Shown: positions 49,601 to 55,600 of the stretch, in pieces
Numbering within the stretch: position 1 is the first letter of the stretch
Layout of the letters: every line of letters starts with the position of its first letter
Assembly (NCBI RefSeq): GCF_037042905.1
Contig: NC_087245.1
Coordinates: 11,098,001-11,162,000, forward strand
Direction: 5' to 3'
Length of the DNA stretch: 64,000 nucleotides
Origin: Lytechinus pictus
Lineage: Eukaryota
Program-made: the position numbers and the translations under genes
Notes under the pieces: generated by a model
The model's database searches: none
Told to the model about the DNA's origin: nothing
Seen by the model: only the letters and a program-made list of their open reading frames with translations

Positions 49601-52600
49601 GAAATGAAACAACTTCCATTATTTTATCGTCAATGTATAATTGCTTGGAAAATGTGTAACAACAAACCCTCTTTTGAGAATACAGGTGAAGATATTAGGC
49701 AACAGTTGTTATGGGGTAATAAAAACATTTTGTATAAGAATAAGTGTTTGTTTTGGAAGCATTGGGTATGCTCAGACATTCTTGTGATTGAAGATATTGT
49801 TAACAACGATGGACAATTCGTAAATTATACAAATAGTATGAAGTATAATTAGAATTCTATAAGTAATAATGAAGTATAAGTCGAGGAGGATAGCATTTCC
49901 CAGGTGTTCGGCAGTGAAATTCACACAATGGAATTCAAAGCAATCAAAATTCCACACAGGGCCAGTTCTCTATAAAAGGCCCTAACCAATGAATAAGAAC
50001 CATCTTTTCAAAGACGGCTAAGATCATACAAAACGCAAGGATCTTGTAAACGATTAACTCATAGGATTGCTTTCCAATCCACTCAAGTAATTTTGCAAGA
50101 TGTACACACCAAATAATCATTTGGCTTGTGTTAATTTGTTGTATGTGTTTTAATGGGGCGCCGTGGTCTAGTGGTTACGACTCTCGTCTTTCAATCAGAC
50201 GGACGTGGGTTCAATTCCAGGCATGACGTGTTTTCCTTCTGCAAGAAATATACCCACAATGTGCTGCACTCAACCCAGGTGAGGTGAATGGGTACCCGAC
50301 AGGATAAACTCCTTGATTGCACTGAGCGCTAAAAGGCAGCTCGAGCTAATTCGGGGTAATAATAATAATAACAATGTGCCTCGGAATAGATTATTTCTAG
50401 ATAGATGGCGCTATATTCCCACAAAATAAGTTCTGCATCTCAAAATTGACTTCTGTATAATCGGGGAGGGAATCAAATTGTTTTGATGCAGGGTGGGATC
50501 CTCCTCGACTTATACTTCATTATTACTTATAGAATTCTAATTATACTTCATACTATTTGTATAATTTACGAATTCTATTACGTAACATTCGTATAAGTCT
50601 TCAGAGGATAGCATGTTCAAAGCCACACACCAGAAGTCAATTTCAAACAATTTGAAAGTAATCTCCCATAATGATCTCGTATAGATCATATTATCTCAAC
50701 GTGGTCACACGATGTTGCCACTTGCCAAATAAGAAAGATTTGTAACACTTCAGAATGAATTGACATTATGAAAATGTACATGTAATAAGAACACATTTCT
50801 GGTGCCATAAGCTGATTGTGCTATAATATGATTACATGTATTTCATCAACGTTGACATATATGTCAATGAGAGGCTGTTTACAAAGGCATTTTCAGATAA
50901 CAGATTTACTCTGTACACCCAATTACTGTATATAAATGGAGGGATGTGTGTACATCCATGGTTACTCGATTGTTAAACCTGGTACATTTACTGTTACACT
51001 ACTGAAAGGTATCAAGAAGTATCTCGAAAGACAGAATGTAATCAAGGAATATTGAAAGTTTGAAACAGCCAATGATTTTACATATAATTATTAATCAATT
51101 GTTTCTTAATGAAGAATCCGAGGAAATTAATCATTGAAATATTCTTCATCGATTCATCTTGCAAATTATCTCCAATCAAGTACATATCATATTTCTGTAT
51201 AATCCATTGATATAAATGTGAAATAACTTCTAATAATTTTATATAATTTTCAAGGTTTTCTACATCAGCAGTAGAGGTGAAAATGGTCTCACTGGAAGAG
51301 CCATATAAAATAATCGAGGTTAAGATAAGAATAATTTATGTTGGAAGATTCATCGTAGGATGAAAATGATATCTTGCTTCAGATATTAAGTCAAAATATA
51401 TCTTTATGATCAAATCAAAAGGTTGATCAAGTGGTGAAGGAGGAATCGCGGTACAATTACTGAGGCATCATGGTCAGTTGGTATAAAGTGTAAAAACTGT
51501 AAATCAGTTTTTAATCTGAGACAAGGTTACTGATGTTTTTTTTTTTAGGGGGTTCCAATGGGTGAATACTAGAACATGTAGAAGGTACTCTTTGTGCACC
51601 TTTACTCTGAGATGAGTACTTTTATAGAAAAAGCGATCACCAAAATAAATTCATACTTGAAGGGAAGAAACTAGTGATGTTTAAACACTTCTCACATCGT
51701 ACAAAATAACTTTTATGACAACTCTTGAAAGTGAAATTTGAATGGTTCATTCAGCGTTTGAACACGCTGGACGAAATTGCTGTCAGCAGCTTTATTGACG
51801 TTAAATAATAAGATATAATTTATGATTGTCCAAAAAAGACTAACATTCAACGATGGTACAATGAAATTGAATCAAACTTCCTTGTAATTTGGTGTGCCAA
51901 GTAAAAGGATATTCTCCCGAATTGGAATTCCATAAAAAGGCTGTAATGTATTTAGATGTAAGCATACTTGAAAAGAAAATCTCCTGAAAGATTGATAAAA
52001 TTTGATATCCTGCATGGTTTAGATTAAATGAAATTTCGTGTTTTCAAAAACTGTTCGATTAATAAATTTATCATTACAATTGATAAGAGTTTTATTGCTG
52101 TCAAACACGATTAACACTGTAACTGAGACAAGTAACTCGACAAGGATTTGTAGGCAGTAAATTGCCTTAATTCAATAATACTTGATTATCAGAATAGTGG
52201 TGGTAGAGGTTGGGGATGTGGTTTACAGCACAGCTTGCAAAAATACATTGGAGTTTATTCTTTTAATCAAACATACGCATCAATTTGAATATATCACATT
52301 GGTATTCATTTGTTTGTGAAAAACAAAACATGTCTTAAAAAAAAAATCTTGTTCTAGGGCATAGGTGCCGTGCAAGAAATCGATTCCTAAACATTTTATG
52401 TTAGTGTATAGTTGGCAGGTCAGATACCTTACAAAACATGATCGCGACACCTTAACATGCTAACGATATTAGCAGTGATTGAGATCAATCATAGGTTGTG
52501 GAGTATCCGGTTGGAGTATATGCCTAGTTGGCTGGTTAAATAAGTAATGAATCTTAATGTTGATAATTGTCAGAAATTAATTTGAGATACGAGTCCAACA

Positions 52601-55600
52601 TGATGACATTTCGATCTATAATGTTTTGATACATGACAACATTGTCGTCTGATTGAATAAATTAAATGTAAACAGTAAAAGAAAAGGGGAAAAGAACCAA
52701 CCAGGTTAGGTCCTAGATGTGCTTAGTCAGGTATTTGTAACTTTCCCCCGTAAAACAGACCTCGAGAATTCGCTTCCAGAAATCCCAGTTTTATTGTTAT
52801 TCATTTTCATTTTTCAAACTATTCATCATCACAAGTTCAATTTTTTTTTTGTATTTCCCTGATGATCGAGGAGTTATTAATGCAAAAACTCAAATTCAGC
52901 TATACAAAATATACAAATCAAAGCAGCATCCTCTAGGGATCATAATGGCTTATACAATATGTTATATCAGATGACTGATTGTTAACATTCGGCAATAAGT
53001 TCTTTTGAGAATCCATGTTACTTTAAATGTATAGTTAAAATTCTTCTTGGTAGCATATTGCATAATTTTGCATGGCACAAGGTTAATGGTTCATGGTTGA
53101 TAGTCTTGTACAAGATGAGTACAGGGTGGAAGAAATTTAAACTTTGATTAGATTAACAATGGATCTCTGGCAGTGTTTTTACCAAATACCAAAAGTGTCG
53201 GAATGCATGTCTGCATACATTCTACATTTTTAAAAGTTAAAAGGTTACTTAATCCAACTTATTGTACATTTCGGGAATTTGAAATCTGTAAGTATCAAAA
53301 GCTTGCGTTGGAAAGGATAATCAGGTGCTTTGTCAAGCTAGAAAATCCAATCTGTTTAAATTGTGTTTCTTTTTTGTTCAATGAATAGATAAGAATACAT
53401 GTACATGTATAGGTCCATGGTCTGACAAAATCTTCAATGTCATGAATGTAGGTTGTCAAGGACAACATGAATGAATAGGTCTATCAGCAATAGAATGTTC
53501 ATGCTTGGTCATGTAGCCTAAAGTCTAGTGAAAATTTACTAGCTACCTCTTTCAATGTAAGTATAGTAATGAGCTATTCATTTAAGCGCCTTGCACGGAT
53601 GAACTACATGTATTTAATAGAGCAAATTTGCGTGTATTATCTACTTGTCTGGTAAACCTCAGACAAGATTTGCATCTTGGCAATATAAATTTTTCATTTG
53701 ACAAAATGAAGTTCCTTCCAGATCCATAATCATTAATTTAATGAAGTATGGAATGAATAATTTTAACATGCTTTTTTCCTTTGAGGATTGTAAAGCTTAA
53801 TATTACAAGCAACAAATGGATGATAGTTGAATTTCGTGTCAAATCTTGGCTTTCCCAGCTTATCAGCAAACTATATCAAATGACTATGAATTAACCAATC
53901 GGGTTATGCCGAAATGTAAAATGGCACAGAAGTAAGTCTTAGCATTGTCCACGCGAATTGTGAGATATCTAGCGATAATATCGCTGTTGTGAAGCTCCTG
54001 GTAGAACTGTTTTACTTGTTTGATTATTTCTAATTTTCTTACAGAAGATTATAAAATTTAACACAAGAGCAAATCGATCATCATTTTATTTTATAAGCAG
54101 TGAAGAAGATTCCCTGCATTGTGCAAAATGCCTTTTGTGTACAATGTACTCTAGGTTATAAAGAGAGGCCTGCGCCAGTCCATGTTATAGCGATGTCAGT
54201 TTATACTCCAAATCGATGCTTATTAACATGTTTAAACGAAAATGGTTCTTGTAAAAAGATTCCCTATGAGGGATAATTCAAAACGTAGGCATACCGATAC
54301 GATTTTAATACATAGATACACATGCTCATAATTTGTCCGGGAATGTCGCCCATTATTATGGCGAAAGATTCACAGTATGCCATTCTATGGCAAAGGAATG
54401 GTAGCATCTAGAGTAAGAAATTCTCCATCTTTGGGATGGTGAATACTCGACAACTAATACAAATTTAACAAGGGTTATATTTGGTCCGGCACATTTGCAG
54501 AGACTGAAGCTTTTGGTCTAATCAGCACTACGGCTTAATTCGATAAACCGAAGAGTTTACAGAGTAATTACTGTAATAATTGAAAATGTGAAAGTGTGCT
54601 GAATCAGCGAAATTTCTAGTAGATAAGATAGGGCAGCGCCCTAATGAAAAAACAGTGGAGGGCAGCACCCTGATGTACGTAGAAAGGTATGGCTCACATA
54701 CCAAAAATATGGGTGGAGGAGCCCTCCTGCCCAAGTCAGCACGACTCGCATGCCATATATCACAGACTGCCATGATAGCTGCCGCTTTTACTCAACTCCA
54801 GGCGGCTTTCCATGCCTGTTCCCCAACGGAGAGCAGGGCTGAAGGAGAGCGTAGGCTTACGTCTCCTCAATACTTACCATGAAGATAAAGATGTGTAGTC
54901 ACTGCCGTCACACTTGAAAAAGATGGTTCTTATTCATTGGTTAGGGCCTTTTATAGAGAACTGGTCCTGTGTGGAATTTTGATTGCTTTGAATTCCATTG
55001 TGTGAATTTCACTGCCTAACACCTGGGAAATGCTATCCTCTGAAGACTTATACGAATGTTACATAAAAGAATTGGATATACTGTGTATTCATGCAAAATT
55101 AAAGAAAAAAGGAAATTATTTATGTGAATCGAAATTAATTTGGAGTTGTATACCAGAAAAATGGAAAAACATTTTTTTTTTAAATAAACATTGCTCAAAT
55201 CATTCAATTGTTAACTACTTTCAATTGAAGGACCATGATGCTGTTTTACATATAAAACAAAGTAAACATTTATCTGTTAAACTTTCTAAAAGATTATACA
55301 ATTTTCTTGTGGATAAAAAGTTTATAACCCCAAATGTTGAACAATATTGGTCACTTTATTTCAAAGAAAATTTGATTTATAACAATATCTGGAAAGAAAA
55401 AAGTTACTTTCATTGAAGAATTTCGTTTAGCTGAATTCAACTTTAAATTTTTGTATAAACTTTTGATGTCAAATGTATATTTGTTTCGATTTAAATTGGC
55501 AGAATCTCCACTTTGTTTTAAATGTAGAACTATTGACAACTATTATCACTTATTTTATGATTGCCATTATTCTAGACTATTTTGCTTAAAATTCAGTAAC

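What the first reader, a model, noticed from the sequence alone, without database searches (positions are those of the whole stretch)
49815..55073. DIRS1-like element with near-perfect replication termini but no intact genes, inserted precisely into LINE ORF2
Seen: 50498-50574 is an exact 77-nt reverse complement of the left end (49815-49891). 50571-50614 is the reverse complement of the right end (55030-55073, 2 mismatches). The two halves overlap at AATT, so this internal segment spells the end-to-end circle junction. AATT also sits at both boundaries, and removing the element restores the LINE frame (NNDGQ-LDILC). ~126-bp ITRs differ at only ~3 positions. Established: ITRs plus an internal complementary region, with integration via a short crossover core, are the DIRS1 tyrosine-recombinase retrotransposon hallmark. 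Inference: the ~4.3-kb interior has no long ORF and carries a SINE, yet the termini look young. This suggests a non-autonomous DIRS derivative mobilised in trans, a class that homology-based annotation easily misses.
Basis: partly seen in the sequence, partly recalled or inferred. Interest (0 to 1): 0.78.

Follow-up and report, generated by a model that had tools for sequence, protein, structure and literature searches.

The report
Gene-less DIRS-type retrotransposon family copy
This 5.3-kb insert is one copy of a family of at least 20 gene-less mobile elements in an animal genome; they carry the end structures of DIRS-type retrotransposons and probably borrow enzymes from related elements that encode reverse transcriptase and tyrosine recombinase, which is a known kind of parasite-of-a-parasite that is rarely documented in animals.

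Summary
It comprises a 128-nt inverted terminal repeat (97%) and an internal segment at 50498-50614. That segment is the exact reverse complement of the left 77 nt and, with 2 mismatches, of the right 44 nt; the two parts overlap at AATT.

The structure is not a local rearrangement. The genome holds at least 20 copies of about 5.3 kb with unrelated flanks. No copy has an open frame above about 160 aa inside the element, and all share the same embedded SINE. Some copies at different loci are 99.4-99.5% identical, while the window copy belongs to an older branch (about 92.5%).

Five uninterrupted LINE paralogs carry a single 4-mer at the insertion point, so there is no target-site duplication. 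Across copies the shared core is AAT plus a usually-T fourth base.

Elsewhere in the genome, elements with homologous 5' ends, internal complementary regions and (except the truncated L040) 3' ends, and the same AATT junction, encode reverse transcriptase plus tyrosine recombinase. One of them has an open 947-952-aa frame.

Substitutions in the internal segment are mirrored in each element's own termini, which is what templated end regeneration predicts.

Two things were not shown: an RNA intermediate, and a fully intact helper. The scan already reported a gene-less split-repeat family in this genome (s1-324887).

The parts
48192..49814 (+). Left part of the host LINE: the RT ORF at 48192-49118 and later ORF2 pieces, ending at the insertion point
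   Evidence: RVT_1 E=1.3e-27; ORFs listed; paralogs 97-98% identical
49815..49818 (.). [quoted passage not shown]
   Evidence: 16 of 17 copies begin with AATT here
49815..49891 (-). Terminal 77 nt, exactly complementary to the ICR part at 50498-50574; this is the 3' terminus in sense orientation
   Evidence: pair I2, 100%; other copies show 0 mismatches per 77 nt in most cases
49886..50013 (-). ITR arm (the 3' ITR in sense orientation), carrying an inward-facing TATA-like box at 49968-49987
   Evidence: pair I1
50155..50415 (+). tRNA-derived SINE embedded between the ICR and the 3' ITR, antisense to the element, and shared by all full-length copies
   Evidence: one unbroken match over query 1-964 in other copies, plus many solo SINE hits at 88-90%; read pile-up and loose ends at 50155, 50254 and 50416; weak tRNA-clan hit; ARAGORN finds no tRNA gene
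50498..50614 (-). Internal complementary region (ICR). Positions 50498-50574 complement the left end and 50571-50614 complement the right end, overlapping at AATT (50571-50574), so the segment spells the circle junction
   Evidence: pairs I2, I3; conserved at 1-3 differences per 117 nt across the family against about 7.5% divergence elsewhere
50615..54912 (-). About 4.3 kb of non-coding interior specific to the family. Positions 50773-51034 are an ancestral 262-bp segment that the younger subfamilies have lost
   Evidence: no ORF above 81 aa; no Pfam hit on the ORF pieces; no tblastn hit with gag, pol or YR proteins of three DIRS elements; the segment is present in older copies and absent in the others
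54913..55040 (-). ITR arm (the 5' ITR in sense orientation), with a TATA-like box at 54939-54958 on the minus strand; this is the putative promoter
   Evidence: pair I1; the motif is invariant in the alignment with the RT-YR relatives
55030..55073 (-). Terminal 44 nt complementary to the ICR part at 50571-50614 (the 5' terminus in sense orientation). It carries 2 changes acquired after insertion and ends in the AATT core at 55070-55073
   Evidence: pair I3
55074..55846 (+). Right part of the host LINE, continuing the interrupted frame

Best explanation
Window 49815-55073 is one copy of a non-autonomous DIRS1-like (ITR plus ICR type) tyrosine-recombinase retrotransposon family. Its sense strand is the window's minus strand. 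It sits in the ORF2 region of a LINE, antisense to the LINE.

Proposed cycle:
1. Transcription starts at the TATA-like box inside the 5' ITR. The RNA therefore lacks the outermost terminal sequences (inferred).
2. Reverse transcriptase supplied in trans by a related RT-YR element makes cDNA (inferred).
3. The ICR anneals to both cDNA ends, templates the missing termini and brings them together at a single AATT. This gives a circle junction (supported by sequence logic and by covariation).
4. The helper's tyrosine recombinase crosses the circle over with a genomic AAT(T) that sits in an A-N-A-T context. This places a core copy on each side and makes no target-site duplication (supported by the junction and empty-site data).

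The 4.3-kb interior is non-coding cargo of unknown origin, and it acquired a SINE before the main burst of amplification.
For: Architecture.

Multicopy family. At least 20 ICR-bearing copies of 97% identity or more lie on many contigs, with unrelated flanks.

No coding capacity. This holds in every copy examined, in Pfam scans of the ORF pieces and in tblastn with DIRS proteins from the same genome.

The gene-less form itself was amplified. Subfamilies 99.4-99.5% identical occupy different loci, and the SINE is shared by all of them.

No target-site duplication.
- Five LINE paralogs carry one 4-mer at the insertion site.
- The left core is AATT in 16 of 17 copies. The right core ends in T in 12 of the 17 right ends listed (10 of the 15 tallied); the others read AATG, AATA, AATC (twice) and AAAC.
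- This means the right copy of the core comes from the target.
- The target shows a bias: position -2 is A in 15 of 16 copies (P about 7e-7).

Relatives that encode the enzymes.
- L040 has an open 947-952-aa frame with RVT_1 (3.5e-24) and Phage_integrase (1.4e-7).
- L038 has RT, RNase H and YR pieces.
- These relatives share the first ~100-180 nt of the 5' end (76-85% identity), the ICR (86-91%) and, except for the 3'-truncated L040, the 3' end, plus the AATT junction. In them the ICR lies downstream of the YR, which fixes the orientation.

Covariation.
- The ICRs of the relatives differ by about 10% from the window's, yet match their own termini 73-75 of 75 and 42 of 42.
- Inside the gene-less family, ICR variants are mirrored in the element's own 3' end.
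- The ICR is far more conserved than the rest: 1 of 117 against about 7.5% (P about 8e-4). Between the two RT-YR lineages it is 86-88% against 63-68% for coding DNA.

Literature.
- DIRS1-like elements have ITRs plus ICRs that overlap on a 3-bp junction, and they integrate at an identical genomic sequence without a duplication (PMC3266345).
- The ICR is essential, and the DIRS-1 RT acts in trans (PMC7192593).
- A non-autonomous DIRS element, TOC1, is known (PMC9940879).
Against: - No RNA evidence. Two RNA-seq runs (coded organism B, possibly another species) covered only the SINE.
- No fully intact helper was seen. L040 lacks the outer right ITR and 3' extension within 1.8 kb, and its gag region is split between two frames. 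The other relatives are degenerate.
- The helper's termini are only 76-91% identical to the family's.
- LINE paralogs read TATT, not AATT, at the site. The exact crossover at this locus is therefore unresolved.
- The origin of the interior is unknown.
Confidence: 0.82

Rival explanations
1. The element moves purely as DNA. A tyrosine recombinase supplied in trans excises it as a circle by recombining the two flanking AATT cores and re-integrates it elsewhere (Crypton-like), with no RNA or reverse-transcription step.
For: Direct AATT cores flank the element, and the recombinase chemistry is reversible. No transcripts were detected.
Against: - The copy number rose to at least 20, including near-identical copies. 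Conservative excision and integration does not multiply copies.
- An ICR would be useless for a DNA circle. Yet it is the most conserved part and covaries with the termini.
- The relatives that share the termini encode RT fused to YR.
Confidence: 0.08
2. These are simply dead, mutated copies of an autonomous DIRS element, or copies spread by segmental duplication, and not a family mobilised in trans.
For: The length (about 5.0 kb without the SINE) is close to that of the RT-YR relatives (about 4.9-5.7 kb).
Against: - The interior has no detectable protein-level similarity to gag, pol or YR of three DIRS elements from the same genome.
- The same ORF-less, SINE-bearing interior occurs in copies 99.4-99.5% identical whose immediate flanks (24 nt compared on each side) are unrelated.
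Confidence: 0.04
3. It is a cut-and-paste DNA transposon with terminal inverted repeats and a 4-bp AATT target-site duplication.
For: Inverted repeats lie near both ends, and a 4-mer is repeated at both junctions.
Against: - The inverted repeats are subterminal; the outer 71 nt and 33 nt are not inverted copies of each other.
- The 4-mer is constant among copies and is written inside the ICR between the two end complements.
- Left and right 4-mers differ in 5 copies.
- No transposase is present in any copy; the relatives encode RT plus YR.
Confidence: 0.02

Closest known systems
DIRS-1 of Dictyostelium and animal DIRS1-like elements (ITR plus ICR type), including those reported from sea urchins (PMC3266345, PMC7192593)
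   Same: Non-identical ITRs with terminal extensions. An ICR near the 3' end complements both termini, which meet at a short junction. Integration occurs at a short matching genomic sequence without a target-site duplication. The inward-facing promoter-like motif in the ITR is also shared.
   Different: This family encodes no gag, RT, RNase H, methyltransferase or YR. Its 4.3-kb interior is unrelated to DIRS coding sequence and contains a SINE. The junction core is AAT(T), with extra target bias upstream.
TOC1 of Chlamydomonas, described as a non-autonomous DIRS retrotransposon (PMC9940879)
   Same: A gene-less, multi-kilobase member of the tyrosine-recombinase retrotransposon order that must be mobilised in trans.
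   Different: It comes from a green alga. From my own knowledge, not checked here, it has a split-repeat terminal layout and not ITR plus ICR. The element studied here is in an animal genome and has identifiable RT-YR relatives sharing its termini.
LARD/TRIM elements and SINE-LINE pairs (non-autonomous retroelements that keep only the cis signals of a partner; my own knowledge)
   Same: Only the termini and cis signals match an enzyme-encoding partner. The interior is unrelated non-coding cargo, and the non-autonomous copies outnumber intact partners.
   Different: Those use DDE integrase or target-primed reverse transcription and make target-site duplications. Here the cis signal is an ICR-defined circle junction used by a tyrosine recombinase.
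Gene-less split-direct-repeat (Ngaro/PAT-like) family reported earlier by this scan in the same genome (s1-324887)
   Same: Same genome and the same logic: an ORF-less family with the end layout of a tyrosine-recombinase retroelement.
   Different: The terminal architecture differs (split direct repeats against ITR plus ICR), and it is a different family. I did not re-test that report.

Membership tests
DIRS1-like (ITR plus ICR) tyrosine-recombinase retrotransposon | Inverted terminal repeats with non-repeated terminal extensions | tested here: met
   128-nt ITR at 97%, with outer extensions of 71 nt and 33 nt; the same layout in all copies
DIRS1-like (ITR plus ICR) tyrosine-recombinase retrotransposon | An internal complementary region whose two parts complement the two termini and meet at a short junction | tested here: met
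   77 of 77 and 42 of 44 complementary, overlapping at AATT; 0 of 121 mismatches in several young copies
DIRS1-like (ITR plus ICR) tyrosine-recombinase retrotransposon | ICR located near the 3' end, upstream of the right ITR | tested here: met
   Met if the sense strand is the minus strand. In the RT-YR relatives the homologous ICR lies roughly 250-520 bp downstream of the YR frame and in the matching orientation
DIRS1-like (ITR plus ICR) tyrosine-recombinase retrotransposon | Insertion without target-site duplication, at a short sequence identical to the junction core | tested here: met
   One 4-mer in five empty-site LINE paralogs; the constant AAT core and a variable fourth base on the right only
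DIRS1-like (ITR plus ICR) tyrosine-recombinase retrotransposon | Encodes gag, RT/RNase H (and methyltransferase) and a tyrosine recombinase | tested here: not met
   No ORF above about 160 aa in any copy, and no Pfam or tblastn signal. The element is therefore filed as a non-autonomous derivative, not an autonomous member
DIRS1-like (ITR plus ICR) tyrosine-recombinase retrotransposon | Replication through an RNA intermediate and a circular or ICR-completed cDNA | tested here: inconclusive
   Two RNA-seq runs of coded organism B covered only the SINE. ICR-terminus covariation supports templated end regeneration indirectly
Non-autonomous retroelement mobilised in trans | Multiple dispersed copies of the gene-less form itself, some of them recent | tested here: met
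   At least 20 copies; subfamilies at 99.4-99.5% identity with unrelated flanks; the SINE shared by all
Non-autonomous retroelement mobilised in trans | Cis-acting termini shared with an enzyme-encoding element in the same genome | tested here: met
   5' end, ICR and 3' end 76-91% identical to elements with RVT_1 and Phage_integrase domains (3' end missing from the truncated L040), with the same AATT junction
Non-autonomous retroelement mobilised in trans | A functional helper present when the copies spread | tested here: inconclusive
   Only one open pol-YR frame was found (L040). That element has a split gag and no outer 3' terminus, and the others are degenerate.

The most novel reading that the evidence does not exclude
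At least four lineages share one strongly conserved junction/ICR module: the 5.3-kb gene-less family, a 2.7-kb gene-less family, and two RT-YR lineages only about 55% identical in protein. This module would act as a common 'address' for one recombinase specificity. The gene-less family is the only lineage with near-identical recent copies, and no fully intact helper is visible. That would mean it is kept alive by cross-mobilisation from a diverged or single-copy helper. It would also suggest that its long-preserved 4.3-kb non-coding interior, recognisable at 67-76% identity in old copies, contributes something in cis, such as packaging or RNA stability, and is not mere junk.
Probability: 0.2. 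Interest if true: 0.6.

Novelty: new member of a known kind. Interest (0 to 1): 0.42.

Why it matters
DIRS-type elements are the least understood retrotransposon order, and their replication model rests mostly on one amoeba element. This family is a natural experiment on that model. Everything except the ITRs, the ICR and about 190 nt of leader has been replaced, yet the family kept spreading. That delimits the cis requirements, shows ICR-terminus covariation in an animal genome, and gives a clean read-out of the recombination core (AAT plus context). Practically, such gene-less elements escape protein-based repeat annotation. They can be found by the ITR-plus-ICR signature.

Tried and rejected
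- Local inversion or duplication: rejected, because the structure is multicopy.
- An LTR-retrotransposon ORF next to a family fragment on C3 (L031, 1017 aa): this is a nested insertion into a family copy, not a partner.
- An intact DIRS element in L037 (ORFs of 438, 716 and 331 aa, junction CCTATT): it has unrelated termini and proteins and is not the partner.
- tblastn of the L037, L040 and L038 proteins against the family: nothing below E=0.1.
- Pfam on the eight longest interior ORF pieces: nothing.
- Rfam on the element: only a weak tRNA-clan hit in the SINE. ARAGORN found none.
- Reads.
  - The RNA runs X21 and X22 give depth only on the SINE, so they neither support nor argue against expression. 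The species may differ.
  - The 'skip' joint 49818>55082 in X3 comes from LINE paralogs and says nothing about insertion polymorphism.
- Findings look-ups by sequence and by ICR words were blank.
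Full report
OBSERVATION

- An inverted repeat of 128 nt at 97% links 49886-50013 with 54913-55040.
- The outermost left 77 nt (49815-49891) recur as a perfect reverse complement at 50498-50574.
- The outermost right 44 nt (55030-55073) recur as a reverse complement at 50571-50614, with two mismatches.
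- The two internal pieces overlap by AATT (50571-50574), and AATT also sits at both outer boundaries.

Matches of 77 and 44 nt cannot arise by chance in a 5.9-kb stretch. Inside the element no ORF exceeds 81 aa.

The host sequence is a LINE.
- An RVT_1 domain (E=1.3e-27) lies at 48192-49115 on the plus strand.
- Deleting the element together with one AATT restores the reading frame across the junction.

IT IS A FAMILY, NOT A LOCAL REARRANGEMENT

A search of the window's own 812-Mb assembly with the whole element found full-length relatives on many contigs. A search with the 117-nt internal segment alone found 20 loci at 97% or better, counting the window copy, plus older ones. Both counts are lower bounds.

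All copies keep the same three-part end structure, and their immediate flanks (24 nt compared on each side) are unrelated. None of roughly 20 copies examined has an open frame above about 160 aa inside the element.

It lies inside one unbroken alignment (element positions 1-964) in all full-length copies, so it was already in the progenitor that spread. Older fragments on C19 lack it.

A multiple alignment of 12 full copies gave these results.
- Subfamilies are 99.4-99.5% identical: L004/L008/L011, and L002/L003 (L014 is 98.9-99.0% to those two).
- The window copy is about 92.5% identical to all of them.
- Its private 262-bp stretch (50773-51034) is ancestral. It is present in older, more diverged copies on C3, C19 and C9 and lost in the younger subfamilies.

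So the window copy belongs to an older branch of a long-lived family that has very recent members. By its own internal clock the insertion is not very old: 2 mismatches in the 121 nt that must have been identical at insertion. Both mismatches are changes in the right end.

INSERTION SIGNATURE

Five paralogs of the host LINE (97-98% identical) are uninterrupted at this point. They carry exactly one 4-mer between the flanks, and it reads TATT. The filled site therefore has one extra core copy that came with the element, which is the opposite of a target-site duplication.

Across copies:
- The left junction is AATT in 16 of 17.
- The right junction ends in T in 12 of the 17 right ends listed (10 of the 15 tallied); the others read AATG, AATA, AATC (twice) and AAAC.
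- The 40 nt next to the right junction are almost invariant. The right copy of the core is therefore the target's, and the obligatory shared core is AAT with a preference for T next.
- The four target bases upstream are biased to A-N-A-T, with position -2 being A in 15 of 16 (P about 7e-7). This resembles the element's own sequence on that side of the junction (ATAG).

This fits the published rule for DIRS1-like elements: recombination between a 3-bp junction sequence and an identical genomic sequence, without a duplication (PMC3266345).

One point is unresolved. The paralogs read TATT where the window has AATT on both sides. Either this LINE copy carried a private T>A change that created a preferred site, or the first base was converted during recombination.

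ENZYME-ENCODING RELATIVES AND ORIENTATION

A scan of the genome for the tyrosine-recombinase domain gave 78 places. Three of the weaker ICR hits (87-90% identity) lie about 0.3-0.6 kb downstream of such recombinase frames, in the orientation opposite to the window's plus strand. These are on C9, C10 and C6.

After fetching them:
- L040 (C6) has an open frame of 947-952 aa with RVT_1 (3.5e-24) and Phage_integrase (1.4e-7).
- L038, L039, L050 and L051 are degenerate members of a second lineage, about 50-56% identical in protein to L040. Between them they keep a 5' end, an ICR and a 3' end homologous to those of the window element, and they end in AATT.
- The alignment of the 5' termini shows homology over about 190 nt. 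It includes an invariant TATA-like motif that faces inward from each ITR arm: window 54939-54958 on the minus strand and 49968-49987 on the plus strand.

In these relatives the ICR lies after the recombinase gene. The sense strand of the window element is therefore the minus strand, and its ICR sits near its 3' end, as in DIRS-1 (PMC7192593).

Similarity between the gene-less family and the RT-YR elements is confined to three parts: the first roughly 100-180 nt, the ICR with short flanks, and the last roughly 140-215 nt. The interior shows no protein-level trace of gag, pol or YR. A second, 2.7-kb gene-less relative with the same module exists on C16 (L041).

EVIDENCE THAT THE ICR IS USED

The ICRs of the RT-YR relatives differ from the window's at about 10% of positions. 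Each still matches its own termini perfectly or nearly so: 75 of 75, 73 of 73 and 42 of 42.

Inside the gene-less family, copies whose ICR differs from the window's at one or two positions carry the same changes in their own 3' end. They show 0 mismatches to their own ICR and 1-2 to the window's.

The ICR is also the most conserved part.
- It differs at 1 of 117 positions between the window and most copies, against about 7.5% elsewhere (P about 8e-4).
- Between the two RT-YR lineages it is 86-88% identical, against 63-68% for coding DNA.

This pattern is expected if the termini are rewritten from the ICR in every replication round, as the DIRS-1 model proposes. Experiments in Dictyostelium, where deleting the ICR abolished retrotransposition, support that model (PMC7192593).

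MECHANISM: WHAT IS SHOWN AND WHAT IS INFERRED

Shown here:
- the end architecture;
- the multicopy, gene-less state;
- amplification of the gene-less form;
- the core-crossover insertion signature;
- enzyme-encoding relatives that share the cis module;
- covariation between ICR and termini.

Inferred:
- transcription from the ITR promoter;
- reverse transcription and integration by enzymes supplied in trans;
- the circular intermediate.

Trans action of a DIRS reverse transcriptase has experimental precedent (PMC7192593), and a non-autonomous DIRS element, TOC1, is known in Chlamydomonas (PMC9940879).

WEAK POINTS

- I found no transcripts. The only raw RNA runs on offer belong to coded organism B, which may be another species, and they cover only the SINE.
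- No fully intact helper was found. In L040 the gag region is divided between two frames near 3261-3327, and the outer right ITR and 3' extension are not found within 1.8 kb.
- Which lineage served as helper, and whether one is still active, remains open.

RIVALS

- DNA-only movement by the recombinase does not explain the rise in copy number or the conservation and covariation of an ICR.
- Decay of autonomous copies does not explain identical gene-less, SINE-bearing copies at unrelated sites.
- A TIR transposon with a 4-bp duplication is contradicted by three things: the subterminal position of the repeats, the AATT written inside the ICR, and the left/right core differences.

COMPARISON AND NOVELTY

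The element works like DIRS-1 and meets its structural criteria, but not the coding criterion. I therefore file it as a non-autonomous derivative of a DIRS1-like lineage.

Gene-less members of this order are known (TOC1), and this scan has already reported a gene-less split-repeat family in the same genome (s1-324887, not re-tested).

In the literature I could search, I found no description of an ITR-plus-ICR-type non-autonomous family in an animal. Repeat databases that I cannot query may hold some. I therefore rate it a new member of a known kind, of moderate interest.

Noticed in passing
L009:446-737 (G000:C1, about 26.130 Mb): Two family copies are joined tail to tail as a 140-nt palindrome with a 12-nt spacer. 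The larger arms continue for about 250 nt and 180 nt. Both copies stop exactly at the outer edge of the ITR and lack the 77-nt terminal extension. This could be an aberrant snap-back replication product or an assembly artefact.
   Followed up: partly
L037:991-5869 (G000:C5:10444500-10452500): An apparently intact DIRS1-like element of a different family. It has overlapping ORFs of 438, 716 and 331 aa, an ITR plus ICR, and a CCTATT junction. It is inserted into a copy of the same SINE that sits inside the window element. At least three YR hits score almost identically (47.3-47.4 bits; C5, C10, C15).
   Followed up: partly
L041:1081-3750 (G000:C16:28178500-28188000): A 2.7-kb ORF-less element whose 5' end, ICR and 3' end are 87-91% identical to those of the window element. 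It is a second, shorter gene-less derivative using the same junction module.
   Followed up: partly
L031:5337-9999 (G000:C3, about 53.261-53.266 Mb): A retroelement with ORFs of 1017 and 610 aa is nested inside an older family copy, between element positions about 264 and 260-447. It looks like an LTR retrotransposon, but its domains were not scanned.
   Followed up: no
window 50571-50576 and 50525-50530; also the junction formed by 55069-55073 and 49819: The circle junction forms the palindrome GAATTC, and a second GAATTC lies 46 nt away in the ICR inside a similar A/T-rich context. A perfect 8-bp palindrome, TTACGTAA, sits 7 nt from the core. These could be recombinase-binding motifs; this was not tested.
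   Followed up: no
L040 compared with L038, L039 and L051: Two RT-YR lineages only about 55% identical in protein (63-68% in coding DNA) keep ICRs that are 86-88% identical and share the same AATT junction. This means either unusually strong constraint on the cis module or exchange of termini between lineages.
   Followed up: partly
window 45429-49382 and 55074-55846: The host LINE copy is itself broken into several short frames (ORFs of 101 to 308 aa). It was probably already inactive or has decayed since. At least 16 paralogs at 96-98% identity show that this LINE family is young.
   Followed up: no
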